Numbered from the stretch's first letter, positions 27,301 through 61,890 are shown. The stretch: DNA of 64,000 nucleotides from Piromyces finnis finn (GCA_002104945.1 MCFH01000037.1:186001-250000); one strand, 5' to 3'. Notes: generated from the letters alone by a model not told the origin. Translations and numbers: made by a program.

Positions 27301-30300
27301 AAAATTGAACAGTCAGGTAGAGATCAAAGATGGGAATTTGATAGAAAAAAGTTATTTGAACAAACTAATTATATGGCTTTAAGATGTGCTGATTTATATG
27401 AAATTTGTGAAGTAATGGAACAATTTTATAATATATTTGGACCAGAATTAAAAGCTGTTACTGGTGATCCACAAAAAATTGATGAAGTTTTAAGAAGAGT
27501 TGAAGGTTTAATTGTTCCATTTGAAACAATTCAATTTGATATGTTTTCAAATAAGTAAGATATTTATCTATATTATATTGTTATTATGTAGAAAGAAAAT
27601 TTGGTAATTAATTAAATATCATTTTTTAGATATCAAACGATATGGAAGGGTTTAATGATAAAATTTAGAGAACAAATAATAAAAATTGAAGATATGGCAA
27701 AACAATTTATTGATGCATCTTTTAAGAAGTTACGTTCAGCAAAGGGTGCATTTGATCTTCTACAAAATATTAAAAATATTAAGAGTAGAGAAAGTATAAA
27801 TAAACAAATGATGGGTAAATTTGATGAAATTTTAGCTCAATATTCTAAAGAAGTTGATGAAATTGATAGAATATTTAGGGAAAATAAGTATGATTAATTA
27901 TTAGATTGATTTTTTATACTTGAATTTATTTTTCATAAAAATTAAATTATTATTATTAATCTTTGATAAGGGATGATCCACCGTGTGCTAAAAATCAACC
28001 AAAATTAGCAGGTGCTATTTCTTGGTCTAAAAGTCTATTTTTACATATTAAAAAACCAATCGTTAGATTCCAATCATTACAAGGTAATTAAAATAATAAA
28101 TTACATATATATTTTTATTTTAGAAAAAATATTCATTTTATTTTTTAAATCAATTTTATTAAAGAAATGTTACAAAGCGAATTGGGTCGTCAAGTCACTA
28201 AGAAATATTTAATGGTTGCTAAAACTATGAAAGAATATGAAGAACAGGTAAGTAATAAAAAATTAAATGAAATTTATTTTAAGCTAATTTTAATTCCAAT
28301 ATATATATAATTTCTATTATTATTAATTATTATAATTAAAAGCTTTATTCACAATGGTGTAAAATGGTAGAAGTAAATGCACTTCAATATTTAAAAGTTC
28401 ATATTTTAGCAAAAGAACCCGTTATTACTATTAATGGACAACCACCATCATTATCATTAGAAGATAAACAACAATCAACTAATATAATCGAGGAAGAAAA
28501 CATATATATTAATTTTAGACCAGAGTTAGCAGAATTAATAAAAGAAACTAAATATATTGATAAATTAGGTTTCTTTGTTCCAGAATCAGCATTAAATATA
28601 GCATTACAAGTAATTATGATAAATAAATAGATATATATAAAAATCAAAAAAATTTAAAAAATTAGATATATTATAGTAATTTAAAATAAATTTTTATGAT
28701 AAATAAATAGGAAGAAAAATATTATTTGTATATTGATCAATTAAATTCTATGATTGATTTATATAAAAATGTTTTAAATCAACTTGATTCAACAGAAAAG
28801 AAATTACTTAAGACTCAGATTGAAAGTTTAAATAAAGTTTTAAGTCCAGGATTTAAAAGATTAAATTGGAATAGTTTAGGTATTCCAGAATTCATAAACA
28901 AATGTAATCAAGTATGTAAATTATTAAATAATTAAATGATTTTAGGAAAATATACAATAATATATTAATATATATAATATTTTTTCTATTATATTTTCCA
29001 ATAGGAAATTACTAAATTTGGTTCATTAGTAAATCAAATTTCTAAGAATGCTGCTAATATATACCGTACTGTTGATCAAATCTCACAATCAAATATAATA
29101 TATGAATTCCAAGATGAAGATGAACTATTAGATGCTCATGTAATTATAATATTATATTAAAAAGTAACAATAAAGTAATAATATATAATATGTAATTAAT
29201 AATATTATATTTAAATTTGATATTTTAGGTCTTTTTTGATATGATAAAGAAGTATAGAAATGATACTGTTGAAGGTCTCGTTCAAAAATATACAAGTATT
29301 GGTCCATTATTAATTAAAATGGAAAGTTTAGTAGCTGGTACTAATAGTGGTAGAAGTGAAAAGTTAGAGGATTATTATTCATATTGGGAAAAGAAAATAT
29401 TCTTTGCATTAAATCAAGTAATTATTAAGCATTATAAAGATTATAAAATTCATATGTAATTTAAAATATTAAAATCAATGTTATTTTTATTATACAATAA
29501 ATTAAATACTTGCTCTAGATGGTTTTACATAATATTGTTAAACTTAATCAATTATTAACAGGGAAAGGAAATAATAATGTAAAAAACGTAAAAGGAAAGA
29601 ATCAACCTGCTATTACCCCATTATTTAAAGTTTCAGCTCTTCTATCTGCTCCAGAAATTATTATTTCTCCACAATCAAATGAAATATTTAAAATGATTAT
29701 GAAATTTGTAAAATCTATTGTAGATTCAACCAAAAGTTTCCTTAGATGGGAAAATAAATCATGTGTTCTGACTACACCTCAAAAAGTTAATGAGGATGAA
29801 GAACCAGTTATTTTCAGTTTTTATTCTGATGTTATATATAACGGCAATATCAGTCAAGCAATTAATCAATTAAATTTAAATTTACAAAAAACATTTGATA
29901 AAGTTTCTAGATATTTGGATACTTGGAGAAAATACAGACCATTATGGAAAGTGGATAAAGTCATTACTTTAGAAAAATTTGCTCAGAAAAAGCCACCATT
30001 ACCAGAATATGATCAAAAATTAATATTTTATTCAAGATTAGCATCAGATGTTCAGAATCAACAAGTCACTCAAGATATTGATTTTATTAGAATAAATTCT
30101 GTTCCTTTACGTGATTCAATTCATAAAGAAGCTATCGAATGGGTTAATTCAATAGGAAAACATTTAAATAATGTCGCGAGAGATGAACTAAGTAGTGTAA
30201 ATGATAAAATAAAAATATTTGATAAAAACATTCAAAGAACTCCAACTACATTAGAAGATTTAACATTTGTATTAAATGCAATATCAGAAATTAAAAATTC

Positions 30301-33300
30301 AACAGAAGAAGTAGAAATGCAATATTTAAATATAAAAGAAGCATATAGAGTATTAATGATGTATAATTGCAAATTTGATGAAGAAGAAAAGAAACAATCT
30401 GATGAATTATATGATAGATGGATTGAATTAGTGAATAAATCAAAAGGTGTTGATGATCTATTGATTCCAGTTAAGGTCACGTTTACCAATACTACTTGTA
30501 ATCAAGTAAGCGACTTCCAGCGTGAAATTAATGACTTTTATGATGAATTTGTAACAAATGGCCCTGGATCAGAAGGTATGAATATGGATGTTGGATTAGA
30601 TCTTTTAAAGAATGCAAAAATTAAAGTTAACAATTTTTTGAAAAAAAGAGAAAATTTAATTACTGCTGAAAAGCTATTTGATTTAACTATTACTTCATAT
30701 CCAAAATTATTTGAATTAGAAAGTCAAATAAAGCTATTAGACAAGATTTATAGTCTTTATTCTGAAGTTCAAGAAAGTATTAAAGATTGGTCAACAACAT
30801 TATGGATTAATCTTGATATTGTTGTATTAAATAAAGGTATAGATTCTTTCAACCATCGTCTTAAAACAATGCCAAAAGAATTAAAACAACAACCTCCATA
30901 TAATGTTGTTGCAGAAAAAATTATGGCATTTAAAAATTCAATCCCATTATATGTTGATTTAAAGAATGAAGCATTGAGAGAAAGACATTGGAAAAAATTA
31001 ATGGAAATAACAGGAAAAAATTTCGATATGAATCCGGAAACATTTACATTGGAAAAATTATTTAGTATGAATCTTCATGAACACACTGAAGTTATTGAAG
31101 AAATTGTTAGTGGTGCAACTAAAGAATTAAATATAGAAAATGGAATTAAAGAAATTGAAACCACTTGGAGAAACATGAAATTCACTGTTACAAAATATAT
31201 GAAGGGTACTGAAGATAGAGGATACATTTTGGGTGCAACTGATGAAATTATGGTCATTTTAGATGATAATTCTATGAATTTACAAAGTATGGGTACGTCA
31301 AGATTTGCATCAGCATTTTTATCTGTTGTTCAACAGTGGGAAAAAAATTTATCACATATTGGTGAAGTTATCGAAATTTGGATGATTGTTCAACGTAAAT
31401 GGATGTATTTAGAATCAATTTTCATTGGTAGTGATATTAGATTACAATTACCAGAAGAAGCCCAAAAATTTGATAGAATTGATAAATCGTTTAAAAAAAT
31501 AATGAATGAAACAGCAAAGCATAGCAATGTATTAGATGCTTGTAATATTGATGGTAGATTAGGTCTTTTACAAGGTCTTTCTGCCGACTTAGAAGCATGC
31601 CAAAAAAGTTTAAGTGATTATTTAGAAACTAAGAGAAATGCGTTTTCAAGATTCTTCTTTATTTCAGATGAAGAATTATTAAGTATTTTAGGTAGTAATG
31701 ATCCAGAGAGCGTTCAAGAACATATTATTAAAATGTTTGATAATATTTTAAAACTAATATTTGGTACTGGTAAATATGAGGGTTATGTTGTAGGTATGCA
31801 ATCAAGTGAAGGTGAAGTAATGAATTTTAGAAAACCTACACCTACTGAAGATAATGTTGAAAATTGGATGGTTTTAGTTCAAGAAGAAATGAAAAGAACT
31901 AATAGATTAATTCATAAAGAAGCTATTTTCTACTATACTGAAATGAATAGAAATGATTGGATTCATAGTTATCAAGGTATGGTTATTTTGGCTGGTAGTC
32001 AGGTTTGGTGGACATGGGAAGTAGAAGATGTATTTAAGAAGATTAAGCAAGGAAATAAGTTAGCAATGAAAAAATATAATAAAAAACTAGGAGACCAACT
32101 TGAAAAATTAGTTATTGAAGTTAGATCAAATTTGACTGCTAATGAACGTAAGAAAATTAATACTCAAATTATTATTGATGTCCATGCCAGAGATATTATT
32201 GATAGATTTGTAAGAGATAGTATTATGGATAAAAACGAATTTGAATGGGAAAGTCAACTTCGTTTCTATTGGGATAAAGAGTGTGATTCTCTTCTTATTA
32301 AACAATGCAATGGTATATTTGATTATGGTAATGAATATATGGGTCTTAATGGGCGTCTTGTAATCACACCATTAACTGATAGATGTTATTTAACTTTAAC
32401 TCAAGCTCTTTCTATGATGCTTGGTGGTGCTCCAGCTGGTCCAGCTGGTACAGGAAAAACTGAAACAGTTAAAGATTTAGCAAAGGCTATGGGTTTACTT
32501 TGTATTGTTACTAATTGTGGTGAAAGTATGGATTATCAAAGTATTGGTCAGATTTTTGCTGGTCTTACGCAAACTGGTGCTTGGGGTTGTTTTGATGAAT
32601 TTAATCGTATTGAACTATCAGTATTATCTGTTATTTCAGCTCAAATCAAGACTATTCAAAATGCTTTAGTAATGGGATTAAAGAGATTCCAATTTGAAGG
32701 AAATGAAATTACTTTAGATAAAAAATGTGGTATTTTTATTACAATGAATCCTGGTTATGCTGGTAGAACAGAACTTCCAGATAATCTAAAGGCATTATTT
32801 AGACCTGTTGTTATGGTTGTAAGTATTATAAATAATAAATAAAAGATAAATTAAATATTCTTAAAAGTAATTATTCATTATGTTATTTTAAATTTTAATT
32901 GTTAATTTAGGTTCCAGATTTAGAACTTATTTGTGAAATTATGCTTTTCTCTGAAGGTTTTACTATGGCCAAAACATTAGCAAAGAAAATGGTTGTGTTG
33001 TATAAACTTTCCAAGGGACAATTGTCAAAACAACATCACTATGATTTTGGTTTAAGAGCCTTAAAATCTGTATTAGTTATGGCAGGAAGTTTAAAGAGAG
33101 GTTCTCCCGATTTAGATGAAGATGTGGTATTGATGAGAGCATTAAGAGATATGAATTTACCAAAATTTGTATTTGAAGATGTTCCACTTTTCTTAGGTTT
33201 AATTTCAGATCTATTCCCTGGACTTGATTGTCCAAGAGTTAGATATCCAAGCTTTAATGACGCTGTAGAAGAGGTTTTGAAGGAAGATAATATGATTATT

Positions 33301-36300
33301 GTTCCTGAACAAGTCGATAAGGTTGTTCAATTATATGAAACAATGTTAACAAGACATACTACAATGGTTGTAGGTCCATCTGGTGGTGGTAAATCTGTAA
33401 TTATCAATACTATTGCCAAAGCACAAACAAAATTAGGTCTTCCAACTAAGCTTTATATAATGAATCCAAAGGCTATTACTGTTATTGAACTTTATGGTAT
33501 ATTAGATATTACAACAAGAGATTGGACTGATGGTTTACTTTCTAATATATTCAGAGAAATTAATAAACCTACAGATAAAAAAGAAAGAAAATATATGGTA
33601 TTTGATGGTGATGTCGATGCTGTCTGGGTAGAAAATATGAATTCAGTTATGGATGACAATCGTCTTTTAACCCTTCCAAACGGGGAACGTATAAGATTGC
33701 AAAAACATGTATCTCTTCTTTTCGAAGTTGGTGATTTACAATATGCATCACCTGCTACTGTTAGTAGATGTGGTATGGTATATATGGATCCAAAGAATTT
33801 AGGTTATAAGCCATATTTCTTCAAATGGGCTTATGGACATAAGAATAAGGAAGAATCCGATAATTTAATTAAATTATTTGAGAAGTATATCCCATCATGT
33901 ATTGATTATGTATTTGAAGGTATATTCCAAGGAGAAATAACTGAACCATTACAATTAGTAATTCCAATTACTTCCTTATGTATGATTTCTCAATTATGTT
34001 GCTTATTAGATACAATGATACCAGAAGGAAAAACTCAAGTTAGTGAAAATGTACTAGAGGGAATATTTATATTCTGTATTATATTTTCAATAGGCGCAGG
34101 AATTCTTGAAGAAGATAGAGAAAAATTCAGTGAAATGGTTAAAAAAATATCTGATTTATCTCAAATTCATACTAATGGAATGATTGGTATTGGTCAAATT
34201 CCAGGAAATGAAAAATCCTTATATGATTATCTATTTGATGTTAGTAAAGAACAATGGGTATCTTGGAGTGAATATATCCCAGAATATGTCCACGAACCAT
34301 TGAAATCATTTAATGATATATTAGTTCCAACTATGGATACTGTTCGTCACACTTGGTTATTAGATAAATTTGTTAGCATTAAGAAACCAGTATTATTTGT
34401 TGGTGAACCAGGTACTTCAAAAACTGTTACATTACAAAACTATTTACATCAATTAGATCCAGAAAAATATATTGTTTTGAATGCTAACTTCTCAAGTAGA
34501 ACTACATCTATGGATATTCAAAGAAATTTGGAAGCTAATGTTGAAAAAAGAACTAAAGATACATATGGTCCAGCTGCAGGAAAGAAATTAATTGTATGCA
34601 TTGACGATTTAAATATGCCTCAAAAGGATATTTACGGTACTCAACAACCTATTGCATTATTAAAATTATTATTCGAAAGAGGAGGTCTTTATAGTAGAGG
34701 AAAGGAATTAAATTGGAAGCATTTGAAGGATGTTCAATTTGTAAGTGCAATGGGAACTCCAGGTGGTGGTAGAAATGATATTGATCCTAGATTCTCATCC
34801 TTATTTGCAACCTTTAATATTACTTTCCCCAAGAAAGAATCATTAAGTAGAATTTATTCATCAATTATTGAGGGACATACTGTTGGTTTCTGTGATGAAG
34901 TAAAAGCTGTTGTTCCAAAAATTACAGCTATGACATTAAAACTATATGAAGATATTTTGCAACATTTACTTCCAACTCCATCAAAGTTCCATTATATTTT
35001 CAATCTTCGTGAGATTAGTAGAGTTTATGAAGGTATTTATCAGACAGTCCCTGACAATTTTACAACAGCAAGTTCATTTGGACGTTTATGGAGAAATGAA
35101 TGTTTAAGAGTATTTTATGATAGATTAGTAACAGAAGATGATAAAGAGTATGTTAATAATTTAATTAATTCCTTAATTGCTGAGAATTTTGAAGACACTG
35201 ATACTATTACCCGTAATCCAATTTTATTTGGTGATTTCCGACAAGCAATGCAAGAAGAAAATCCAATAAGAATTTATGAGGATTTACTCGATTATAATGC
35301 AATTAGACCTATTTTCCAAGAAATTTTGGAAGACTATAACGATGTTAAAAACAAGATGAATCTTGTTCTTTTTGATGATGCTCTGGAACACTTAACAAGA
35401 ATTCATAGAATTATTCGCTTAAAGAGAGGTCATGCTTTATTGGTTGGTGTTGGTGGTAGTGGTAAACAATCACTTACTAAGTTAGTAGCATATGCAGCAG
35501 GTTATGATGTCTTTGAAATTACTTTAACAAGAGGTTATGGTGAAAATGAATTTAGAGAAAACTTAAAGACCCTTTATACTCAATTAGCAGAAGGTAAAAA
35601 GACAATATTTATGTTTACTGATGCACATGTAGTACAAGAAGGTTTCCTAGAATTGATTAACAATATGTTGACAACTGGTATGGTACCTGCCCTATATGAA
35701 GATGATGAAAAAGATGCTTTAATCAATTCACTTAGAGAAGAAGTAAAAAAGATGGGAATTGTTGAAAATAAGGAAAATGTATGGCAATATTTTATTAATA
35801 AGTGTAATAATTACCTACACATTGTTCTTTGTATGTCACCTCAAGGTGATAAATTACGTGAAAGATGTAGAAGTTTCCCTGGTTTGGTTAATAATACTAT
35901 TATTGATTGGTTCCAGCCATGGCCAGAACAAGCCTTATTTGCAGTTGCTGACGCTTTCCTTGGAACTGGTAATGTTCCTCAAGAAAATAGAGCTGATATC
36001 GTTGCACATATGGTTAAAGTTCATCTTTTAGTTGGTGAGATTAGTAATCTTTTCTTACAGAGATATAGAAGAACAAATTTTGTTACACCCAAGAACTATC
36101 TTGATTATATTAATACATATAATATGCTATTAAAAGATAATTTAGAATTAAATGGAAAACTTTGTAATAGATTAGAAACTGGTTTAGGAAAATTAGAAGA
36201 AGCATCTTCACAATTAGATGTATTAAATGAACAATTAGCAGAACAGAATATCGCTGTCAAGAATAAAACTGAAGCATGTAATCAGCTTTTAGAAGTTATT

Positions 36301-39300
36301 ACTAAGAACACAGCTGAAGCAGAAGAAAAGAAAGCATTAGCTGTAAAAAAGGAGGCAGAATTAACTACACAAACATTACAAATAGCTAGTGATAAAGAAG
36401 AAGCTGAAAATGCATTAGCAGAAGCTCTTCCAGCCTTAGAAGAAGCTAAATTAGCCTTAAATAATTTATCTTCAGCTGAAATTACTGAAATTCGTTCTTT
36501 CGCTAAGCCACCAAAAGAAGTACAAAAAGTATGTGAATGTATTTGTGTTATTAAAGGTATTAAAGATATTTCATGGAAATCAGCAAAGACTATGATGTCT
36601 CAAGTTGATTTTAAATCATCTTTATCTAATTTAGATATTGATAACATTTCAGGTCAACAATTAAAATCAGTGAAGGCTATTATTCGTGAAATGGATATAC
36701 AACCTGCTAGAATGAAAGAAATTTCATCTGCTGGTGCTGGTTTACTACAATTTGTTAATGCAGTTGTTGGTTATTGTAATGTAGCAAAACAAATTCAACC
36801 AAAGAGAAATGCTGTAGCTGCATTGGAAAAGAATTTACAACAAAGTAGACGGGACTATGAAAAAATTACAAAAGAATTAGCTGATTTAAATGATCAATTA
36901 AAATCTCTTCAAGACAACTTCCAACAAAAGAAGACAGAACAAATTGAGCTTAAACAAATGGCTGAACTTATGGAACGTCGTTTAATCGCTGCTGATAAAC
37001 TTATATCTGGTTTGAGTTCTGAAAGAATTCGTTGGTCAAAAGATTTAGAAACATTAAAAGAACAAAGAGTCCAACTTCTTGGTGATTGTTTATTAGAATC
37101 TGGATTCTTAAGTTATACAGGTGCCTTTAATTGGGAATTAAGAAACGAATTAATTTACAATAGATGGGTAAATGATTTGAAAGATAAGAATATTCCAATA
37201 TCTCCTAACTTTAGAATTGAAACATTGTTAGTTACTGATGTTGAAATTAGTAAGTGGGCTTCTCAAGGTCTTCCAAGTGATGAACTTTCAATTCAAAATG
37301 GTATTTTAACTACTAAAGGTACACGTTTCCCATTATGTATTGATCCACAACAACAAGCTCTTAATTGGATAAAAAAGAAAGAAGGAAGTAATAATTTAAA
37401 AATATCGTCATTTATGGAACCAGATTTCTTAAAACAATTAGAAATGGCAATTACATATGGTTTTCCATTTTTATTTGAAGATGTAGATGAGTATATTGAT
37501 CCTGTCATTGATAATGTTATTGATAAGAATATTAAGACTGCAAGTGGTAGAAAGTTTATTGTTCTTGGAGATAAAGAAGTCGATTATGATCCAAATTTCC
37601 GCTTATATTTAGTTTCAAGACATGCTAATCCTGTATATTCACCAAAAATATTTGGAAGCGCCTTAATTATTAATTATAATTTAACATTTAAGGGTCTTTC
37701 AGATCAATTACTCAATGTTGTTGTTAATCATGAAAGAAGAGAACTGGAAGAACAAAGAGAAAGATTAACTATTGAAATGAGTGAAAATAAAAAGTTATTA
37801 AAAGACTTTGAAGATATGCTTTTAAGAGAATTAGCTTCATCTACTGGTATGATGTTAGATAATGTTGAATTAATTAGCACATTAGAAGATACTAAGTCTA
37901 AAGCAAGTGAAATTTCACAAAAGTTAATTTTAGCTAATCAAACTTCAGAAGAAGTTAATAATTCACGTAATGCTTATAGACCAGTTGCAAAATGTGGTGC
38001 GGTATTATTCTTTGTTATAACTGAATTATCTACTATTAATCCTATGTATGAATATTCATTAAGTGCTTTTCTGGAAGTATTTAATTCATCATTGAAGAAG
38101 AGCAAACCAGATCCAGTTCTTTCAAAGAGATTGGTAAAAATTATTGATACATTAAAGTATTCAGTATATAATTATACTTGTACAGGTTTGTTCGAAAAGC
38201 ACAAACTTATGTTCTCTTTCCAAATGACAATAAAATTAATGGATGCAGATGGTAAAATAGATCAAAATGAATTGAATTTCTTCCTTAAAGGAGATATATC
38301 TTTAGATGAACCTGCTATTCCAAATCCATTCCCATCATGGATGACAAATCAAGGATGGAAAAATTTAATAAAATTATCTACTATTAATCCTGTATTTGAA
38401 AATCTTGTAAATGATGTAATGAATAATGAAGAAATATGGAAAACATGGGCTAAAAAAGATAGACAAACAAAGAATATTGTTTTCCCTATGGATTATTCAA
38501 AATCAACAACACCATTCCAACAATTGTGCTTATTAAGATGCTTTAGAATCGATCAAGTGTATAATGCAATTACAAATTTTGTTATTAGTGAAATGGGTGA
38601 AAAATATGTTATGCCACCAGTTATTAATTATCAAAATATTTTTGATCAATCATCTCCTACTTCACCAGTAGTATTTGTTTTAAGTCCAGGTGCTGATCCA
38701 CAGAGTGATTTACAAAAATTAGCAGAAAATCTTGGCTTTGGTGGTAATAAGTTAAAGTTTTTGTCTTTAGGTCAAGGTCAAGCTCCTATCGCACTTCAAT
38801 TATTAGATATTGCTGTTTCCAGAGGTCAGTGGCTAATGCTTCAAAATTGTCACTTGTTAGTAAATTGGCTTAAAACATTGGAAAAAATACTAGATAAAAT
38901 TGAAAAGCCACATCGCGACTTTAGATTATGGCTTACAACTGAACCAATTTCTGGTTTCCCAATTGGTATATTACAAAAATCATTAAAGGTTGTTACAGAA
39001 CCACCTAATGGTTTGAAATTAAATTTGAGAAGTAGTTTCTATAAGATAGCAGAAAAAGACTTGGAAGATTGTGAGCATGAAGTATTTAAATCATTAGTAT
39101 ATATCTTAGCATTTTTCCATGCTGTTGTACAAGAAAGAGGTAAATATGGAAAGATTGGTTGGAATGTTACTTATGACTTCAATGAATCAGATTTTAGAGT
39201 ATCTTATACTATTATTAAGATGTATTTGAATAAGACTTTGGAACAAGATGATCAAAAGATTCCATGGACTACATTGAGATATTTAATTGGTGAAACAATC

Positions 39301-40544
39301 TATGGTGGTCGTGTTACTGATGATTATGATAGAAGAGTTGTTAATGTCTATCTAGAAGAATATTTAGGTGACTTTTTATTTGATTCCTTCCAACCATTCT
39401 TCTTCTATAAAGGTACAAATATCAGATATAAAGTTCCACCTGTAGGATCACGTGAAGATTATATTAATTACATTGAAGATTTACCATTAACCAATTCCCC
39501 AGATGTATTAGGTCTTCATCCTGATGCTGAAATTGGTTATTTGACAACTGCTGTTGATACTATGTGGTCTGAATTATTAAGTTTACAACCACGTAGTTCA
39601 GAAAGTTCTGATGGTATTAGTCGAGAAGACTTTATTGGAGGCATTGCTTCTGACATTCAAGAAAGTATCCCAGCAATATTTGATACTGTTAGAATTTATA
39701 AGAGCTTTGGTACACCAACACCAACTAAGATTGTATTAATTCAAGAATTAGAAAGATGGAATATATTGGTAGAAGCCATGGATAGCTCTTTACGCGATCT
39801 TAGAGGTGCATTGAAGGGTGAGATTGGTATGAGTCAAAAACTAGATGAAATTGCTAATAGTTTATTTGATGGTATACTTCCTGATATGTGGAGAAACTTA
39901 GCACCACAAACTGAAAAGAAATTAGGAAGTTGGATGCTTCACTTTAAGAAGAGATATAATCAATATGCAGAATGGGTTAAAGAAGGTGAACCTATTGTTA
40001 TTTGGTTAGCTGGTTTACATGTACCAGAAGCATATACAACTGCATTAGTTCAAACAGCTTGTAGAAAGAATGGTTGGTCTTTAGATCGTTCAACATTATA
40101 TACAGAAGTTACTGAATTCGTTAATCCAGAAGATATTACAGAAAAACCAGCATCTGGTTGTTATGCTCAAGGTTTATTCTTAGAAGGTAATATAACAATA
40201 TTATAAATTTCGTGTGAATAAACAATAAAACTAATTTTGTATTATTATTTTATAAAACTTATGTAAATATATTAGGTGCTGGTTGGGACCTAGAAGAGAA
40301 CTGCTTGAAAAGATTACCACCAGGAAGTTCACTTTATCAAACACTTCCAATTTTGCGAATTATTCCAATTGAATCTCATCGTTTACATTTAAAGAATACT
40401 TTTAAGACTCCTTTATATGTTACACAACAACGTAGAAATGCATCAGGTGTTGGATGGGTTATGGATGCAAATCTTGCTACAAAAGAACATTATAGTCACT
40501 GGGTATTACAGGGAGTAGCTCTTGTTTTGAATATTAGTGACTAG
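24358..40544 (+). CDS. DNAH10: Axonemal dynein heavy chain, inner arm I1/f alpha (DNAH10-like), 18 exons
   Basis: Four P-loops: [32 protein letters not shown]. The atypical third loop GxxGTSKT and the C-terminal [13 protein letters not shown] are DNAH10-type. Other conserved motifs include [16 protein letters not shown] and the coiled-coil stalk. All 17 introns are GT-AG and keep the frame; the large exons are 29519-32818 and 32911-40186. Confidence 0.93.
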
Positions 40545-45848: not shown

Positions 45849-48800
45849 TTAGAATGAAATATCCAAGGTTTCTAAAAATACTGCATTTTTTCCTTTTTTG
45901 AGTTTTCTTTTTCTTTTTGTTTTGGATGGCTTTTGCATTTCTATTGGTTCTTTTTCTTCGCTATTCATATCTACATCATAATCAATTATTTCAATATCAT
46001 TGTTATTTTTATTTTCTTTTTTAATATTTTTCTTTATAGTTACCTATATTATTATTAACATTATTAAATAGTTGATAGAAATTAATGTTAAAAAAAATAA
46101 TTACTATTATTTTAAGAAATTAATATACATATTCTAATATATATATCTTTACATTGGGATCTGCTTTTATTTTTTTTTCCATTTTTAATTCTTCAATTTG
46201 TTTTTTAAGAATGTCTATTGTTTCTTCATACTTTCTTTTCTTCTCATTAAATTTATTTGTTATTTCTTCTTCAAATTGCTTAAATGATTGTTCATGATCT
46301 TTTTGAAGATGTATTATCTATTAAAAATGTTTTATATATATATATATTTATACTTAATATTTAAAAGCATAATTAATATATTTAACTTGCATATTAAATT
46401 ACATTATTTTCTAAATCATCTATCTTCTTTTGTTTGGTTTTAACTGATAATTCCATCGTATTAAGATTTTCTTTTAACATTTTTATCTTTGTTATATATA
46501 AATAAAAGTTAAAAATATTTTAATTAATTTTCATTAATTTTAATTCATATATATACTATAATTTATTATTTACTTTTTTATTTTCTAATTTATCAATTTG
46601 GCTTGATTTTAATATTAATTCCTAATATTTTTTATTTGATTTAATTAATATTTTAGTAATAATCTTATTGAAAAAAAAAGTTACTACCATAAATGTACAT
46701 ACCATTTTTTTAAGCTATATATATTAAAAAATATATATTAGTAATAATAGAATAGACATTTATAATATATATATATAGTTTGAAATGATACCTTTTCATT
46801 AATTTTTCTTTTATCATGCTTTATAGTTTTTTTCTAAATAATGGAAAAAATATTAATTATATTATTATTTTATTAAATATAAAATGATAAATAATTATTT
46901 TTGTATCTTGTTTTAATTATAAACTTACCTGCTCTTCAAAACTATTGATTTGTTTTTCTAAATTCTCAATCTGGATATAGTAATTTATATATTAGTATAT
47001 TGTTAAAACTATATATTTATAAAATATTAATCAAGATAATAAATATAAAATTATAATTTTACTTCTTGTCCTAGTGATTTTATAATTACTTCTTTAACTT
47101 TAAGTTTACTTATTAGTCTGTCATTATCCTGTAATAATTATATTATATTAATTAATAAATAACCAAAAGTATATTGAATATAATAAAATAACAAACTATA
47201 CCCTTTGTAATTGACTTAAGTCTTGAATATTTACTAGATTTTCAACAATAGCTTTATTACTCTATATATTTAATAATCTTTTAATTATATAAATAATATA
47301 TATATATATTTATTATTTATTTACTTTAATACCTCTTTGATCGAATCAAGTGATTGATATTCTTGTATTTGACCTTCATATATATAACAAAGTTTTATTT
47401 AAACATAAAAATAAATAAATAAATTTTTATTTTCATTTTTCGATTATATAATAATATATATAATTACTCATTTGATTTTCAATGTTCTTCATCATTTCAT
47501 TTCTGATAATAAACTCTCTCTATAAATTTTTTATATGGTTAACGAATATAAATATGAAAAAAAAGTTTTATATAAAATATTTAACTTACTTGTTGTCTAT
47601 AAACTTCAGATTCAACTAATAATGATTTTAACTTATTAATATGTTCTTCAAATGAATCCACTAGTTGACAAACTTCACTCTCAGTTAATACACTTTCAAC
47701 AACTTCATCATTTTTTTTATTATCAAAGATATCCTTTTTATGAGTTTCTATTTTAATACTACCATCTCCTAATAATTTAGAAGTTCTACCAATAATTTTT
47801 TTCATACTGTTTGAGAGAGGTGTTGATATGATAATTTGTGATGTATTTGGATTAGGTGTTTGAGGTGGATTTTGATTTTGTTGACTATCTAAATTATTTT
47901 GAGATTGACTTTGATTATAACCATAGTTTTGGTTTTGAATAGAATTTTGACATATATTTAAATTTATTGATTTATCATTTTTGTTATTTACTATAGTTTT
48001 CTTTTTGGTTTGTGATTTTGGTAAAACAACTCTTGGTCGTTTAATTGTTTGTAATCCCGAGTCAACTCTAGCTGAAATAGGTGCAACTTCTTTTATTGTT
48101 GCTGAAAATCGTAATACTGTCAACGTTTCATCATAAAATTCAGGTAATGGGTTAATATTAATAATGGTTGAAACATGGCCATTTGTTAATGATGGTCTTA
48201 ATAAAGAGGTTAATTTACTGTCATTAAACGGTGGTAATTCATGTTGTGTACCCTTTTGTATATTTCTTAAGCTATCGAATACTCGAGATAATACCATAAT
48301 TGATTTATTTATAGAACCAGCTTCTTTTAATTGCTTTTGCTTACTTTGGGTATGATTAGCTCTTTCAGAACCAGCTAAATCAACAATTGTGAATCGGGAA
48401 ACAAATACATCATTTTCTTCTTCATTTTGGCATAATAAACGTACTGTAAATATCGAGTGAGAACGACTACTTGATTGATTTAGTCTAATTATTAAATTAT
48501 TATTATTATTGTTATTATTACTATTAAATTTATCACCTTTGATGCATTTTTTTTTAAGAAAAAAACTATATATTTTTAAAATGAAATCATATTAAACTAC
48601 CTTGTGGAAAATTTTCGTCTATTTAGTTTTCCTTGTTTTAATATATTGTCACAATCCTTTATTTTTTTAAAAAATCAAAAAGGTTTTATTTATATTACTA
48701 TATTTTGATATACATAATAATAATATATAAATAATAATATAATATTACTTCATAACTATTAATTGGGACATTTTTTAAATCCTTTACATAATTATTTTTA

Positions 48801-54431: not shown

Positions 54432-57400
54432 TTAAAAATTAAAATCAAAAGTAAATTCAGGCATTTCAAATTTACTTCCATTATTATCTTCTTTCTTTGT
54501 GTTTTCAGTATTTGTTATTCCTGTATTGTTGTCTTCAATTTTTGATTCCTGATTTTGTTTATTTTCGTTATCGTTATTTTTATTTTCATGTTGATGTTCT
54601 ATATTAAAGTTAAGATCTTTCATAATATTATTGAAGTATTGTTCAGACTCGCTGATATGAGATTGTTTATTGGTTTCATTTTTAGTCTCATTAATATCAC
54701 TTATAAATGACTTAGAAGTTATTATTTCTATGTTTTCATCTCTTGGCATTTCATTAAGTGGCTTCTTCAAAGAATTTATTACTTTTTCAAAATATTGATT
54801 TGTTTCTTCTTCAAGACTTTTTCTATTATTAAATGATTCTTTTGATTTGCAATATCTATTATTACTTCTACTTCTACTTCTACTTCTATATTTTATGCTA
54901 TCACTATCTCTTTCTCTGTTTCTGTCTCTATCTCTGTTTCTGTCTCTGTCTCTATCTCTATCTCTATCTCTATCTCTATCTCTATCTCTATCTCTATCTC
55001 TATCTCTATCTCTATCTCTATCTCTATCTCTATCTCTATCTCTATCTCTATCTCTATCTCTATCTCTATCTCTATCTCTATCTCTATCTCTATCTCTATC
55101 TCTATCTCTATCTCTATCTCTATCTCTATCTCTATCTCTATCTCTGTCTCTGTCTCTGTCTCTGTCCCTTGGTCTATAACTATCATATTTACCTCTTTTT
55201 CTATATTTTTCTTCTTCATTATACTTCATTCTGTTTCTACTACTTCCTATATAATCACGTCTATCTCTATAATATCTATCCTTATATCTGTCACTTTCTT
55301 TATATTTGAATGATTTATTTATATAATTATCATTGTAGGCATATTTTGAATCAACTTTTATTTCAGTTTTCGGTTTACTTAATTCATAATCTTTATTTAT
55401 TGTACTTATATCTTTGTTTCTACCTGAGAATGGAAATTGCATTTTTATCTTTTTATTTTTATTGCCTATATTATCAATATTTTCACTAATTTCTCCTTTT
55501 TCAACTTTATAGGGTCTAGCGTTTTTTATTCTTAATTCTGAATTATTTTGACCATTATTAAATAAATTATTTTTATTATCTTTATTATTATCATTGCTGT
55601 CATTGTTATTGTTTATTATTTCATTAGAAACGTTGTTATTATCAATTATTTCAAATGACGATTTTGGTGAGAATTCAAAATCATGAATGGAAAATTGACC
55701 TGGAATTGGATTTGAAGAAGACGCTTGTGATAATTTCTCATCACTTAAAAATTCAGTGATTGTATATCTATTACTATTATCATTATTTATTCTATTGTTA
55801 TCATTATTATTATTTATTATTTCATTAGAAACGTTGTTATTATCAATTATTTCAAATGGCGATTTTGGTGAGAGTTCAAAATCATGAATGGAAAATTGAC
55901 CTGGAGTTGGATTTGAAGAAGATGCTTGTGATAATTTTTCATTACTTAAAAATTCAGTGATATGATATCTAATATGTGGAGAATATGAATATTTGGAATT
56001 ATCTTGTTTTAATAATTCATTAATTTTATCAATATTATCTGTCATTAGATTTTTACCTTTGTCTTTTTTGTTTATTAAATTTTCAAATTCTTCTAGATTA
56101 TCCATTGTTATGCCTTTACCTTTCTTTTTATCAAAAATACTTAATTCTGATGATTCATCTTCGTAGGCATTTTTACCTTTTCTCTTTTTTTTATTTTTTA
56201 TATTATCATTTTTAATTTCTTTTTTATAGCTTGATTTTGTATTTAAGTACGAACTTGATGAAGTCTCTTTTTTTAAGGATTTTGGTTCTTTTTTTGGTTC
56301 TTTTTTAATACCTTTTAGATCTGCCATAAGTTCTCCATCATCAGAACTACAATCACTAGCAAATTCCAAATTAGAAACTTTTATTTTTAATGCATGTTCA
56401 CTCTCAAGTTCTTTCATGTATTCATTTAATTTATCATAATCTTCATGAACTACTGGACTACTGGGAATATCATTTAATTCATCATCTGTTTCATTTGAAT
56501 TAGAATTATTATCCAATTCTGAATCTGATAAAATATCATCTTCTAAATCTTCATTTTCTTTTATAAATCTTCTTATATTATCATAGTATGGATAAATATT
56601 TTTTGGTACAACTTTATTATATGGAGGATAATTTGTGTCTTTGTAGTCAACATATAATTTTCTTTCTTTTGCATTTCTAATTAAGTAATACCAAAAGTCC
56701 ATTTCTTCAAGTGATCTTGAATTTCCAACAATAACCAATGAATTTATTGCTTTCATTAATATTTGACTAATAATAAAAACATTTTGAAGTCTATTTTTAA
56801 TTTCAAACTTTGTGAGTGTACATGTAAAAATAATAATTTCAATTTCATTACATTTAAATTCATTTAGAGTCGTAATTTCAATATAATTTAAAACTTCTAT
56901 ACCATAATTTTCACTAAATTTATTTTTTAACATTTTTACTTGTCCTATGTATGGTGATAAAATAGCTATTTTATTCATAAAGAAACGATCTGGGTTATTA
57001 TTCAATAGTTGATGAACAATATTAAAAACAGCATCAACTTCATAACTATTATATAAAGACTTTGAAATAAAATTATCATATCCATCAACATTATAAAAAT
57101 GATAGTTATGGAATAATTTATAAGGATAAAAAGATATTTCCTTTTTTTTCTTCTTTGAAATTAATTGCGCTCTTTTAGAAATATCATTTGAAATAGAACT
57201 AGAACTAGAATTATTATTATATAAATCTGAATTATTATCCTCTAAAGCATTTATTACTTTTTTGTTATAAAGAGATGAGTTAAAAAAGGAAACAATTTCT
57301 TTATTCGAACGATATTGTTTTACTAATTGGCATATAACACTTGTACTGCATCTTATTGCACGATTGAAAAACGTGCTTTCATTAATAATTTCTATTAATG

Positions 57401-60400
57401 GTTTGTTAATCCATTTTTTTTCACGATTAATATAATTTCCAATTAAAATAATTTTATCTAAGTCAGCAAAAAATGGAATAAAAATATTTAATTCCATGAA
57501 TTCATTAGCATCATCCATAATTACAACATCATATTTTTTATTATTATTATGAAGAATATCATATATTGGAAGACTACTATTTGTATTAGGACTAATAGCT
57601 ATATTATGATTTAAAATAACATTATTTGTAGCCGTTTCTTTCCAATAAGCAATGATTTCTTTATATTTATTAGAGAAACGATTTAAATTTTTAAACATCA
57701 AATTTCGTTCGTGAATAGTATCATACAATTCACCAATATATTTATAATATTCTGCTTCTTCCTTTGCTGATAAAGATATACCTTTTTCTCTACAAAATTT
57801 AATGCGTTTTAAAACATTATTTAGTTTATTTTTCTTTTTTGAAATATCATTTTTATAATTGATTAATGCTTCAAATGTTTGTTTTTCGTACGGTCCCAAT
57901 TTTTTAAATAATTTATTTTCATTGTATGCCTTTTCAATCATATCAATAACTTCATTTACAACTAATGTTTCAAAAGAATATTCAATTGATCTTGGATTTA
58001 TTTGCTCATCTGGATTACCAGAACTAAGACGAATTATATTAAAATTACTGTACATATTTTTTTGAAATATACAAATTAAATTATCACAACTACGTGAATT
58101 CGGGGTACATATTAAAATTTTAAAATTAGGCATTTTATCTTTATTTTTGAGAAATAATGCTTTAACAATGGATATAACTGTTTCAGATTTCCCTGTACCA
58201 GATGCACCATGAATTATTGTTAAAGACTTTTCATACAAAATGGAATTTTTAATTGCATCAACTTGATTTTCATTCATAATCCATCCTTTATCACCTTTTT
58301 TTAAATATTCAATAATTTTATCAGCATCTTCTCCATTCTTTTTGTATACTTCTTTGAATTTTTCTTTTTCAATATTATTAATTTCATTATTAATATTATA
58401 TAATGATGAAGGCTTTAAAATTGCTTTATTAAATGGCAAATTATCAAAATTTTTTAGAATTTCATATTCTTTTACAAATGAATCAATTGAAAATATCTTT
58501 TGACTTTTCCATCTTGAATTGTTTGAAAAGTAGGAATAAAGGAAGTTATTATCTTTTCTTAAATATGCTATGCAATTAATATTTGTTTCATTAAATTTCT
58601 TTTTTCTGATTTCTTTAATAACAACAAAACATGAAAGATCATAAATATATGATATTTTTTTTTTATTTTTTGCCTCTATTAATGATATCCATAATACATC
58701 ATTCTCTTTCCAATTTTGGTTTTCAATTAAATTTAAGTAAGATGAAATAAATTGAATACCTAAAAAAATTATATTATATCATAAAAAATTATTAATAAAA
58801 AAAATAATTATAATAATAATTATTATATATAATAAACTGCTTACTTTCAAAAGTTTTATATGATTTAACACTTCGGATTGTCAAATTAATATTTTGATTA
58901 TTTGGCATTATTTCTCTTGCATTTAGATATTCGATATGACAACGATTTAATATTAAATTTTTACTGTATTTTATATAATCATCTTTAGAATTAAATTCTA
59001 CTACAGGCTTTTCGATAGGAGTATATTCAATTTTATCATATTTATGATTATCTCCGTATCTCCATATTAATAATTGAAGTAAAAGAAATTCCATTTCATA
59101 TAAAATATTAGGTTTTATTATTTTTATTTCTTTCTTGGATTCATCCTCTTCATTTTTTATTAATTTTTTATTTTTTTCGAAAAGTTTTAGTTTATCTTTA
59201 TCCTTAGAACTTTGAATTTTATATAAATTAAGGAATTCAGAATAATTAACTTTTGATTTTAATTTTTCATGTTCAGAAAGAGAGGGAATAATTGTATTGC
59301 TTATTGTAACATTTTCAAGTGTATATAATAATAATATCTTTATAATAATATTTAAAGAATAGGATTCATTATCATTTTCTTTTATTGCAAATCTAAGGAG
59401 AATAAATAATTATAATATTATAAATATATTTTAAAATTCTGAATATTATTATAAACTTTTAAATAGTAATTATTAATTATTAAATATATAATAATAAAAA
59501 ATAAAAAATAATAAAGATAATTACTTGAATAATGGTATAATATAGCGATCTAATTCAGGAGCAATTTGATGAAAATAACTTTTTTTACCTTTACTATCTA
59601 TAGAGTTAATAATTATCGAAAAAGCGTCTAACATTTGATTATGGCAATTCAGTAAATGATCATTATCAATTTTATTATACCACTGATTAATCCTTCTTAA
59701 TCCAATATAAATAAAATTGAAAATACATATTAATAAATCCTTTGATTTAATATATTCAGATATTTTATTTTCTGTTTCAATAACACTAACAATATTATTA
59801 ATAAAGTTTGTAATAGAAGAAACTGTATAAAAAAGACATTGTTCATCATTTGTAACATTAACAGATAAACTGTAATATATAAAATTTTTTATATTTGTTA
59901 AACATTGATTTGGGAAAGTATCAAAAAGAGTACTTAATGCGTCATTTCTATTTTTTTTATTTGTAATAAGTTCCAATAATTTATAAGACATTTCTGATAA
60001 ATACATATGTGGTGAGAGTATTTGCTTTATTAAAAATTGTATACCTTCTTCATTAAAAAATATTTTTTTTAAAATTGATTTCCCAAAAAAATGTTTTATA
60101 AAATTCATGTATAGTTTTATAATAAAATTTGTTTGTGATTCTTCTTCCGAAATATGGTTTTCAGAATAAATTAAAAAAAGGTTTGATACTATTTCAACAA
60201 TTTCTTTAAATATGATAGGAAAATTTAAAATTAAATCAAATCTCTTAAAAAAACTATTCCATGTCGATGTATGGATTTTGTTCTCCGGATTTATTATATT
60301 TACAATAGAATTTGGTGTCTGTGATAATGGATCTATATCCATTTCATCTTTATTCCCTTCTTTCATAGGTTCTAAATTACCATCATCTTCTATTTCATTT

Positions 60401-61890
60401 ATTTTGGAAGTAGATTTTGGTTTATTATTTATGGTATATTGATGAACTAAAATTATTGTTTTAATATCTTCAATAAACAATTCCCTTATTAATTTATTAT
60501 AAAATATTAATAAACTTTCAGAAGAATATAAATTTTCTAGAATAATAGAAGTAAATTCATTTTTCTCTTCTAATATGTTTAATTGTTTTAAATATTCTAA
60601 CATACACATATCTATACATATTTTTGTATTATTTTTCCAGTCTCTGTAATAAAAGAACAATTTTTTCCATAATGTAAATATTTCATTTGCTGATAATATG
60701 CCTTTTGAAGATTGTATATAACATTCTATCCATTTATATAAAAAATTATCTTGACTTAATAAAGTAAAGTTTTTTTCTTTCATTAAATTTTGGTACTTTT
60801 CATAACTTATAAGCTTTTCATAATATATTGTAATCATTGATGGTGTAAACCCTTGGAAATTCCAAATGATGTTTTCCATTAATTTCGATAAAATATATAT
60901 TGCATTTAATGAAAAGATAGGATTATTGTCTGGTCTTCCAAATGTTTCAGTACAAACATAATTAAAAAAATATGGAATATCTTGAAATAAGGCTTCAACA
61001 AAAGCTTTATCCATTAAAGGTATTATATTAATTATATTTTTATATAAAACTTTTGGATCTTCTACAAAACAAAAATAAGGGTTACAGCCATAATTCTTTA
61101 AAGATTTAAATAATTTTTTGTTTTTCGAATTTATTACTTCTGGATTATTATCCATAAAATTTTTAAATTCGAAAAGGTTTAAAATATATAGTCTTAATTT
61201 TTTATAATCTTTTTCATCCAAATTTCTAAAAGTAATGCCAATAAAACTATTAATCCATTCTCGAAGTTCAGTGTTTTGATGAAATATACTTATAAAAACC
61301 CCAGGATAAAATTTTGTTATAAGTTCTAATTTATTTTTTGATTTTAAGAAATGAAAAAGTTTTATAAAATGATTATTAATACTATATGTTTTTAAAAATT
61401 CGGGATAACAAAGAATTTCATAAAGCATATTGTTACCACAACATTGATATGCATTAATTTCTGAATCTGATAATGAAGAATAATTAGTTAAAGTTCTTAT
61501 AACTGTTTTAATACATCTTTCTATTCTTTTGATATTTTCTCTACGAAGTAATTCTTCAAAATATTCAGCAGTTCCGGGATCATAATATGATTTTATATTT
61601 TCTAAAAAATTTTTTGATATATGATGAAATGTATCTATACAGGAAATACAATTGAACATTTGTCTTTCAAATGATGTTTTAAGTTTTTCAGCAGATTTAG
61701 AATGTTCTATTGTGAAACAAACGATTAACTCCTGCGCAACATCAGGATAACCACAAATAAAACAATCATTTGTTTTCTTTGCAAGTTCAACTGCTTCATG
61801 GAAAAATAACTTTTTAATTTTTTCATTACTTCTATCATTTTTGTACTCATTTAAAATTTCAAGAATACTTGTGTCTTTCTTGATAAACAT
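54432..61890 (-). CDS. SEN1: SEN1/senataxin-like Upf1-family (SF1B) helicase homolog with degenerate catalytic motifs and an RD/RS-rich tail, 3 exons, about 2400 aa
   Basis: Exon 1 (about 59524-61890) is SEN1_N-like (CISCIDTFH, LYEILCYP). Exon 2 (about 58858-59392) has LLQLLIWRY...FNSKDDYIKYSKNLIL, matching Sen1 LYKIILQWDY...FNSPADYQKVMKPLL. Exon 3 (54432-58759) has NENQVDAI, IHGASGTGKS, KILICTPN, LVKQYRSNKEI, IAILSPYIGQV. The splice junctions keep the frame. Confidence 0.82.
54907..55170 (-). repeat. Coding hexanucleotide repeat (AGAGAT)n encoding about 40 Arg-Asp dipeptides
   Basis: (TCTCTA)n on the + strand, with TCTCTG/TTTCTG variants at the edges, in frame within ORF 54432..58439. Confidence 0.95.
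55569..55970 (-). repeat. Tandem duplication, 2 x 201 bp (67 aa), in the SEN1-like tail
   Basis: RYHITEFLSNEKLSQASSSNPTPGQFSIHDFELSPKSPFEIIDNNNVSNEIINNNND and RYTITEFLSDEKLSQASSSNPIPGQFSIHDFEFSPKSSFEIIDNNNVSNEIINNNND. The anchor atatct occurs at 55764 and 55965. Confidence 0.93.

What the first reader, a model, noticed from the sequence alone, without database searches (positions are those of the whole stretch)
56690..58260. SEN1-like protein with systematically decayed ATPase/helicase motifs but an intact ~2400-aa frame: candidate pseudo-helicase
Seen versus the Sen1/Upf1 consensus: motif I IHGASGTGKS (consensus IQGPPGTGKT, Lys kept); Ia TPNSRSCDNL (APSNAAVDE); Walker B VIMDDANE (IIDEAxQ, catalytic Glu to Asp); motif III LIGNYINR (VGDPxQLPP lost); motif V TTLNEFKCNEIE (TVDGFQGxEKD lost); motif VI ISQILMKAINS (RRxNVALTRAK, Arg residues lost). 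The N-terminal domain, motif IV (QYRSNKEI) and SPYIGQV remain, and there are no stops or frameshifts. Established: these residues are needed for ATP hydrolysis and coupling in SF1B helicases, and Sen1 is essential in budding yeast for Pol II termination and R-loop removal. Inference: this is either an enzymatically dead paralog repurposed as an RNA/Pol II-binding scaffold, or the only Sen1 in a lineage that terminates transcription differently. This is my best candidate for undescribed biology in the window.
Basis: partly seen in the sequence, partly recalled or inferred. Interest (0 to 1): 0.75.

Follow-up and report, generated by a model that had tools for sequence, protein, structure and literature searches.

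The report
Motor-dead Sen1 copy in gut fungi
Anaerobic gut fungi carry an expressed, conserved second copy of the transcription-termination helicase Sen1 whose ATP-burning residues are gone, so it most likely acts as a non-motor RNA- or polymerase-binding adaptor beside a normal Sen1.

Summary
A three-exon gene on the minus strand (61890..54432, 2413 codons, no stops) encodes SEN1_N plus a Upf1-like helicase core. In that core, motifs II (DE to DD), III, V and VI are degenerate. The Q motif, the P-loop GxxGxGKS and the first Walker-B Asp are intact.

It is not decay. Three relatives carry the same substitutions: Anaeromyces robustus BCR32DRAFT_263938 and two metagenome proteins. The helicase part has dN/dS of 0.12-0.15. 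A zero-mismatch transcript contig is spliced exactly at intron 2.

All 147 other listed hits of an exhaustive search are Sen1-like proteins, and the 57 whose motif scan was printed keep canonical motifs (two with single gaps). Among them is a canonical Sen1 clade in the same phylum (Piromyces finnis, Neocallimastix, Orpinomyces). That clade sits at a different, conserved locus and evolves 5-10 times more slowly. In the tree the dead clade is its sister.

So the "dead paralog" reading is favoured over "only Sen1 of the lineage". The gap: I could not show both copies in one genome. Other agents' notes call this genome P. finnis, which has the canonical gene, but I could not verify that.

No paper in the library pairs Sen1 with "pseudohelicase". 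The scan had not noted this on other DNA. The function (non-motor adaptor or RNA clamp) is inference.

The parts
59525..61890 (-). Exon 1 (ATG at 61890): N-terminal SEN1_N-type domain, 788 codons plus 2 bases of a split codon
   Evidence: ORF. Pfam SEN1_N at 4.6e-22. 43% identical and colinear with A. robustus P0002. 23% identical and colinear with canonical P. finnis Sen1 P0155, E 8e-29.
59393..59524 (-). Intron 1 (132 nt, GTAAT...TTAG), predicted
   Evidence: Read from the sequence. It restores the frame, and the junction region matches P0002 (IIPLF... / ...SYS.KIIIKILLLYT). No transcript contig was seen across it.
58845..59392 (-). Exon 2: linker plus the start of the helicase module (brace/stalk-like LLIWRY...VEFNSKDDYIKYSKNLILNRCHIEYLNARE)
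   Evidence: Translation. Aligns to P0002 residues about 780-960. Covered by transcript contig X1 record 1 from 59268.
58760..58844 (-). Intron 2 (85 nt, GTAAGC...TTTAG), confirmed by RNA
   Evidence: In one search, run X1 record 1 (3308 nt, depth 22.8, 0 mismatches) lies on 59268..58842 and then on 58756..56000. It skips 85 nt; the 3-nt offset is the 'gta' shared by both sides.
54432..58759 (-). Exon 3: 1B barrel, RecA1, prong, RecA2 (residues 1-706), then a 735-residue low-complexity tail and the stop codon
   Evidence: ORF. Pfam AAA_11 at 3e-20 and AAA_12 at 1.4e-21. The AlphaFold model's best PDB matches are SETX/Sen1 8ftm, 8ram and 5mzn, E 2e-28 to 8e-21.
58185..58276 (-). Q motif (NENQ) and Walker A (GASGTGKS): intact
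   Evidence: N162, Q165, G184, G187, G189 and K190 are invariant across all 28 and all 15 aligned Sen1 relatives, including the four degenerate ones.
57504..57527 (-). Motif II VVIMDDAN: catalytic Glu replaced by Asp, and Gln by Glu
   Evidence: IMDDA[NDE][ED]F in all four members of the clade. Yeast E1591Q is ATPase-dead (PMC5452015).
57417..57446 (-). Motif III LIGNYINREK in place of VGDPxQLPP
   Evidence: GNYI[NH]R[ED]K is conserved in the clade.
57294..57317 (-). Motif IV QYRSNKEI: QYR retained
   Evidence: Q481, Y482 and R483 are nearly invariant.
56838..56873 (-). Motif V TTLNEFKCNEIE in place of T[VI]DGFQGxE
   Evidence: Only T630, F634 and E638 are kept.
56742..56783 (-). Motif VI VFIISQILMKAI in place of VRRMNVxxTRAR: the RR pair is lost and the TRA Arg is replaced by an invariant Lys
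   Evidence: Yeast R1820Q has no ATPase activity and is lethal (PMC5452015).
55617..55967 (-). Two tandem copies of a tail motif, ITEFLSxEKLSQASSSNPxPGQFSIHDFE
   Evidence: One similar copy in P0001 (LTEFISEEQRERPSSSNEPGRFSLNDFDLS).
54930..55170 (-). (RD)n tract of about 45 dipeptides followed by RS repeats
   Evidence: RD/RS/RE-rich tracts are also present in P0001 and P0002.
54435..54470 (-). C-terminal motif FEMPEFTFDFNF
   Evidence: P0001 has EFEIPQFSFNFNF near its end.

Best explanation
This is a Sen1-derived pseudo-helicase. It arose by duplication of Sen1 in, or just before, the Neocallimastigomycota. It keeps the whole Sen1 architecture: a SEN1_N-type N-terminus, brace/stalk, 1B barrel, RecA1, prong and RecA2. 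It has lost the residues that hydrolyse ATP and couple hydrolysis to movement: the motif II Glu, motif III, the motif V D/Q/G, and the motif VI RR pair.

The nucleotide-binding half of the pocket (Q motif, P-loop Lys/Ser, first Walker-B Asp) and the QYR of motif IV stay invariant. The Thr/Arg pair that contacts the RNA 3' end is conservatively replaced by Ser/Lys.

Most likely mechanism (inferred): the protein still binds a nucleotide and single-stranded RNA but cannot translocate. It would then act as a static clamp or adaptor. Its SEN1_N domain, its conserved tail motifs and its RD/RS tract would connect it to RNA polymerase II, the replisome or RNA-processing factors. The canonical Sen1 of the same fungi would do the motor work.

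Shown: the architecture, the motif losses, their fixation in four taxa, purifying selection, expression and splicing, and the existence of a canonical clade in the phylum.

Inferred: loss of ATPase activity, retained nucleotide and RNA binding, the partners, and coexistence of both copies in this one genome.
For: Architecture: Pfam SEN1_N, AAA_11 and AAA_12. The best PDB sequence and fold matches are SETX/Sen1.

Motif losses. They are identical in window, P0001, P0003 and A. robustus P0002.

Constraint: dN/dS is 0.15 for window vs P0001 in the helicase part and 0.12 for P0001 vs P0003 with dS 0.9. The canonical helicase gives 0.07.

Expression: a spliced, zero-mismatch transcript contig.

Canonical clade in the phylum: P0155 (P. 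finnis), P0159 and P0158 (Neocallimastix), P0160 (Orpinomyces), P0004, P0156 and P0157. Canonical motifs were seen directly for P0004 and, in the parts present, for P0155, P0160 and P0159; the clade was found.

Different conserved loci: Phosphodiest-Sen1-Tcp11-PRP39-like for the canonical copy in P. finnis and N. californiae, with the Phosphodiest neighbour also on a metagenome contig. For the dead copy, A. robustus has GalK/GalT upstream, and the window shares a downstream neighbour with it.

Tree: the dead clade has 100/100 support and joins the branch between canonical gut-fungal Sen1 (98/95) and all other fungi (89/83). Its tips are 5-10 times longer.

Experimental basis for calling it dead: yeast E1591Q and R1820Q lack ATPase and termination activity, and T1289A/R1293A lose RNA binding (PMC5452015).

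Precedent for pseudo-helicase scaffolds: MUT-15 (bioRxiv 10.64898/2026.09.04.749402) and Utp25 (PMC9539457).
Against: No single genome was shown here to hold both copies. Annotated proteomes give a complementary pattern: the dead copy only in A. robustus, the canonical one only in Piromyces, Neocallimastix and Orpinomyces.

The identification of this genome as P. finnis comes from other agents' notes and I could not verify it.

The grouping of the dead clade with canonical gut-fungal Sen1 could be helped by their shared AT-rich amino-acid bias. The stem is very long (4.7 changes per site), and the tool flagged odd composition for all four dead-clade rows.

A Lys at the R1820 position and an Asp at the catalytic Glu position leave a slight chance of residual slow hydrolysis.

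The motif IIIa Tyr that stacks on adenine is not kept, so even nucleotide binding is uncertain.

The structure model is only moderate: pLDDT 69.6, and residues 443-548, which include motifs III-IV, are below 50.
Confidence: 0.62

Rival explanations
1. It is the only Sen1 of this genome. In the Anaeromyces-like lineages the single Sen1 ortholog lost its motor and evolved fast, while Piromyces, Neocallimastix and Orpinomyces kept the canonical one. Termination and R-loop control would then run without a Sen1 motor.
For: Annotated proteomes show a complementary distribution. The gene tree is also compatible with an accelerated ortholog if those species branch first. No canonical copy was found for A. 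robustus.
Against: The two clades sit at different loci, each conserved across genera. Many independent notes call this genome P. finnis, and that species has canonical P0155. The dead gene is itself missing from public protein sets for this genome, so missing annotations are a realistic cause of the complementary pattern. One ENA accession series holds two canonical proteins (P0152, P0156; dS about 1.1) and two dead ones (P0001, P0003; dS about 0.9). That fits two species each carrying both copies.
Confidence: 0.17
2. It is still an active, unorthodox ATPase or helicase. Asp would stand in for the catalytic Glu and Lys for the arginine finger.
For: The P-loop, the Q motif and the first Walker-B Asp are invariant in a fast-evolving clade. 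D416 and K669 are conserved in all four members.
Against: Four motifs are degenerate at once: II, III, V and VI. The single changes E1591Q or R1820Q already abolish ATPase in yeast Sen1. The motif VI RR pair, the motif V D/Q/G, motif III and the motif IIIa Tyr are all replaced by unrelated residues.
Confidence: 0.1
3. It is a decaying pseudogene, or an assembly or annotation artefact.
For: The weak Pfam scores and the absence from public protein sets could suggest a dying gene.
Against: It has 2413 codons with no stop. The same substitutions are found in four taxa. dN/dS is 0.12-0.15. A spliced zero-mismatch transcript exists. Tail motifs are conserved.
Confidence: 0.02

Closest known systems
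Sen1 / senataxin (SETX), SF1B Upf1-like 5'-3' RNA/DNA helicase (S. cerevisiae 5MZN and 8RAM; Chaetomium 8FTM)
   Same: It has a SEN1_N-type N-terminus and the barrel, prong, RecA1 and RecA2 order. It gives the best sequence and fold matches. It falls inside fungal Sen1 in the tree. It keeps the Q motif, the P-loop, motif IV QYR and the C-terminal xPxNIY segment.
   Different: The motif II Glu, motif III, motif V and the motif VI arginines are replaced. It evolves 5-10 times faster. It has an RD/RS tail. Pfam SEN1_barrel gives no hit.
Canonical Sen1 of Neocallimastigomycota (P. finnis BCR36DRAFT_50492, N. californiae LY90DRAFT_664546)
   Same: Same phylum and same overall architecture. The N-terminus is colinear at 23% identity and includes a shared C.IC..P....ELI.CF segment. 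It is the sister group in the tree.
   Different: All its motifs are canonical. Its helicase is 75-93% identical between genera, against 59-64% in the dead clade. It sits at a different locus (Phosphodiest/Tcp11/PRP39-like). Its tail is K/E-rich with SPSLKERY repeats.
S. pombe Sen1 / Dbl8 paralog pair
   Same: It is a fungal lineage that keeps two Sen1-family genes.
   Different: The Schizosaccharomyces Sen1 checked here (P0049) keeps canonical motifs. Its paralog was not scanned; that Dbl8 is also canonical is my own recollection. Here one copy is motor-dead.
Pseudo-helicase scaffolds: MUT-15 (C. elegans CPUG complex), Utp25
   Same: The RecA-fold helicase architecture is kept while the ATP motifs are degenerate, and the protein is reused as an RNA-binding scaffold.
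   Different: Those are DEAD-box-like (SF2) proteins. This one is SF1B and Sen1-derived, and it still has an intact P-loop.

Membership tests
Sen1/SETX family (evolutionary membership) | N-terminal SEN1_N domain | tested here: met
   Pfam PF12726 at 4.6e-22 on exon 1. P0002 gives 7.6e-21.
Sen1/SETX family (evolutionary membership) | Upf1-like SF1B core (AAA_11 + AAA_12) | tested here: met
   3e-20 and 1.4e-21, above the Pfam cut-offs but about 150 bits below canonical Sen1.
Sen1/SETX family (evolutionary membership) | Sen1-specific accessory parts (brace, barrel, prong) | tested here: inconclusive
   There is no Pfam SEN1_barrel hit. However, the model has a beta-rich N-terminal module and long prong helices, and its best fold matches are SETX/Sen1. 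TM is only 0.38-0.41 and pLDDT is 69.6.
Sen1/SETX family (evolutionary membership) | Groups with Sen1 orthologs in a tree | tested here: met
   All non-self hits of the exhaustive search are Sen1-like. The tree places it next to gut-fungal Sen1, with bipartition support 89/83.
Active SF1B helicase (functional membership) | Motif II DE with catalytic Glu | tested here: not met
   DD in all four members.
Active SF1B helicase (functional membership) | Motif III GDxxQLPP, motif V TxDxFQGxE, motif VI RRxNVxxTRA[KR] | tested here: not met
   The window has GNYINREK, TTLNEFKCNE and FIISQILMKAI.
Active SF1B helicase (functional membership) | Walker A GxxGxGK[ST] and Q motif | tested here: met
   GASGTGKS and NENQ; these columns are invariant.
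Active SF1B helicase (functional membership) | RNA-stimulated ATPase and 5'-3' unwinding | not testable with these tools
   This needs recombinant protein.
Pseudo-enzyme (pseudo-helicase) | Catalytic residues lost, yet the fold is kept and the gene is under purifying selection and expressed | tested here: met
Pseudo-enzyme (pseudo-helicase) | An active paralog in the same genome | tested here: inconclusive
   A canonical clade exists in the phylum. Presence in the same genome rests on unverified notes that this genome is P. finnis. My own checks failed to decide.

The most novel reading that the evidence does not exclude
The dead copy is a nucleotide-loaded, non-translocating RNA clamp. It would use Sen1's own polymerase- and replisome-docking N-terminus to compete with, or gate, the canonical Sen1 motor. 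That would make it a built-in, dominant-negative-like regulator of transcription termination or R-loop removal. Alternatively, in some gut-fungal genomes it is the only Sen1 left, and those fungi terminate without a Sen1 motor.
Probability: 0.2. Interest if true: 0.75.

Novelty: new variant of a known kind. Interest (0 to 1): 0.5.

Why it matters
Sen1/senataxin is studied as a motor: its ATPase is what dislodges RNA polymerase II and removes R-loops, and disease mutations in SETX hit these same motifs. A natural copy that is conserved and expressed, and that keeps every domain but the motor chemistry, would be a ready-made separation-of-function allele. It could show what the Sen1 scaffold does without translocation. 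It would also extend the short list of pseudo-helicases to the SF1B Upf1-like family. In addition, the gene appears to be missing from the public protein set of this genome, and several public gene models of the canonical copy look incomplete.

Tried and rejected
1. Word-based protein searches with exon 3 and with P0002 returned only P0001 and P0002.

2. I tried to prove the species, or the presence of both copies in one genome. Exact look-ups of 12 window ORFs found nothing; most are exons of spliced genes. There are no shared repeats with the P. finnis locus L007. Tetranucleotide signatures do not separate the three genera. treekit.origins gave no organism. A findings search by sequence with P0004 was blank, which means nothing.

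3. Two JGI metagenome scans with dead-clade peptide patterns found no relative. Both stopped at exactly 600 pattern matches, so I treat them as uninformative.

4. Reciprocal loss (dead copy keeps SEN1_N, canonical copy loses it): rejected. Pfam sees SEN1_N only in the dead copy. But both N-termini are equally far from chytrid Sen1, with E of 1e-16 to 1e-18 against Spizellomyces.

5. The ESM Atlas feature search only confirmed the AAA_11/AAA_12 family.

I kept only rows known to have passed (A4) and did not send the others elsewhere.

7. The joined three-exon protein was never built or searched. Exons were handled separately by reference.
Full report
**Gene model**

The window is about 18% GC. 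The gene lies on the minus strand. ORF listing and direct reading give three exons:
- Exon 1: 61890..59525.
- Intron 1: 132 nt, GTAAT..TTAG.
- Exon 2: 59392..58845.
- Intron 2: 85 nt, GTAAGC..TTTAG.
- Exon 3: 58759..54432.

Together these make 2413 codons without a stop.

Intron 2 is confirmed by RNA. A 3308-nt contig of run X1, with no mismatch, lies on 59268..58842 and continues at 58756..56000. Three other runs hold shorter zero-mismatch pieces, so four runs in three studies hold it.

Intron 1 rests on GT..AG, frame restoration and homology across the junction with the Anaeromyces protein.

Each exon was searched by reference.

**Domains and motifs**

Exon 1 matches Pfam SEN1_N at 4.6e-22. 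Exon 3 matches AAA_11 at 3e-20 and AAA_12 at 1.4e-21. The best solved relatives by sequence are Chaetomium SETX and yeast Sen1.

They also add four points:
- The Q motif (NENQ) and the first Walker-B Asp are kept.
- The P-loop is a proper GxxGxGKS.
- The Gln of motif II is Glu.
- The position of yeast R1820, the gamma-phosphate arginine, holds a Lys.

The Thr/Arg pair that contacts the RNA 3' end in Sen1 (T1289/R1293) is Ser/Lys here.

The Sen1 structure paper reports that E1591Q and R1820Q abolish ATPase and termination, and that T1289A/R1293A lose RNA binding (PMC5452015).

**It is not decay**

Three relatives carry the same replacements: IMDDA[NDE][ED]F, GNYI[NH]R[ED]K, TLxxF[KN][CY]NEIEI and S[QK]xL[LM]KAINSL. 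They are:
- Anaeromyces robustus BCR32DRAFT_263938 (P0002, 59% identical).
- Two metagenome proteins, P0001 (64%) and P0003 (62%).

Nei-Gojobori estimates for the helicase part:

| Pair | dN/dS | Note |
|---|---|---|
| Window vs P0001 | 0.15 | dS saturated |
| P0001 vs P0003 | 0.12 | dS 0.9 |
| Canonical gut-fungal helicase pair | 0.07 | for comparison |

The tail is less constrained (0.38). It still keeps several elements: short motifs (IPxSPVVHEDYDxLNxYMKELE, ITEFLS..GQFSIHDFE and a C-terminal FxFNF) and RD/RS tracts.

An AlphaFold model built on 15 aligned sequences is of moderate quality (pLDDT 69.6). Its best PDB matches are SETX and Sen1, with E from 2e-28 to 8e-21 and TM about 0.4.

**Is there a canonical Sen1?**

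An exhaustive phmmer search of 1.84 billion representatives found only P0003 and P0002 as close relatives. After a large gap came P0004 (1e-46), and then Sen1 of chytrids, blastoclads and mucoromycetes. The motif scan was printed for the first 60 proteins. Only P0001, P0002 and P0003 lack every catalytic motif, as does the window protein, which was not itself in the scan. Nearly all the rest carry the canonical motif I, III and VI strings; my motif V pattern was too strict to match many of them.

Searching with P0004 revealed a canonical Sen1 clade in Neocallimastigomycota:
- Piromyces finnis BCR36DRAFT_50492 (P0155).
- Neocallimastix californiae and N. lanati.
- Orpinomyces.
- Two more metagenome proteins.

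Helicase domains in that clade are 75-93% identical between genera.

The N-terminus of P0155 is colinear with the window's exon 1 (23% identity, E 8e-29). Both N-termini are about equally distant from chytrid Sen1.

**Paralog or fast ortholog?**

A maximum-likelihood tree of 32 helicase domains (LG+C20) gave the following:
- The dead clade has 100/100 support on a very long stem.
- It attaches between canonical gut-fungal Sen1 (98/95) and all other fungi (89/83), so it is their sister if the root lies among other fungi.
- Its tips are 5-10 times longer than canonical tips.

The canonical gene sits between a Phosphodiest gene and Tcp11/PRP39-like genes in both P. finnis and N. californiae. The Phosphodiest neighbour is also present on a metagenome contig. 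The dead gene has other neighbours in A. robustus (GalK/GalT upstream). It shares a downstream neighbour with the window. Two loci, each conserved across genera, favour paralogy.

One ENA accession series also holds two canonical proteins and two dead proteins with similar synonymous distances, about 1.1 and 0.9. That fits two species each carrying both copies.

**The gap**

I could not show both copies in one genome.
- Annotated proteomes show the dead copy only in A. robustus, and the canonical copy only in the other genera.
- Many notes by other agents call this genome Piromyces finnis. If that is right, P0155 is the canonical partner, and the dead gene is simply unannotated there. It is absent from the protein collections.
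- My own attempts to verify the species failed.

**Mechanism**

The pattern is selective. The phosphate-binding and adenine-reading residues of RecA1 stay invariant in a clade that otherwise changes fast. Lost are the catalytic base, the RecA1-RecA2 coupling motif III, and the RecA2 residues that sense the gamma-phosphate.

My best reading is a protein that binds nucleotide and RNA without translocating. It would use its Sen1 N-terminus and its tail motifs as docking sites. In yeast, the Sen1 N-terminus binds the replisome (PMC7034062, abstract); its binding to Pol II is from my own knowledge.

This reading is inference. The lost motif IIIa Tyr and the low model confidence around motifs III-IV weaken even the nucleotide-binding part.

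**Novelty**

No paper in the searched library combines Sen1 with 'pseudohelicase', and only one unrelated paper mentions both Sen1 and Neocallimastigomycota. Known pseudo-helicase scaffolds such as MUT-15 and Utp25 are DEAD-box-like.

I rate this a new variant of a known kind: a lineage-specific, motor-dead Sen1. It is of moderate interest until the biochemistry and the same-genome question are settled.

Noticed in passing
window 29519-40206 (+): Two long adjacent ORFs (1107 and 2421 aa, GC about 0.30) encode most of a dynein heavy chain. Pfam hits include DHC_N2, AAA_6/7/8/9, MT stalk, Dynein_C and an axonemal-type DYH2-5-8 coiled coil. This is presumably for the zoospore flagellum.
   Followed up: partly
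window 54930-55170 (-): About 45 uninterrupted Arg-Asp dipeptides, encoded by a hexanucleotide microsatellite inside the coding tail. Its length is likely to vary between strains. The antisense strand gives spurious LYLYLY/SLSLSL ORFs.
   Followed up: no
P0159 / P0158 (N. californiae, N. lanati canonical Sen1 models): In the alignment these public models lack the stretch from the prong to just before motif V, so motifs II-IV are missing (columns about 530-880). This is probably a skipped-exon gene-model error rather than a real deletion.
   Followed up: no
P0002 (A. robustus), residues about 1490-1660; L002 14733-15262: There is a roughly 170-residue Ser/Thr-rich insertion between motifs IV and V that is absent from the window, P0001 and P0003. 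It could be a real insertion or an unspliced intron in the public model. The model also ends before the C-terminal FxFNF motif.
   Followed up: partly
window 54432-61890: No protein identical to any part of this gene was found in the public protein collections, although the mRNA is present in public runs. The gene seems to be unannotated for this genome.
   Followed up: partly
window 47584-48297 (-), 21367-23263 (+): One ORF encodes the end of a kinesin motor domain. Two others encode F-box and LRR segments. They are exons of spliced genes.
   Followed up: no
L007, L008, L003: The canonical gut-fungal Sen1 keeps the neighbours Phosphodiest (upstream) and Tcp11 plus a PRP39-like HAT-repeat gene (downstream) across Piromyces and Neocallimastix.
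   Followed up: partly
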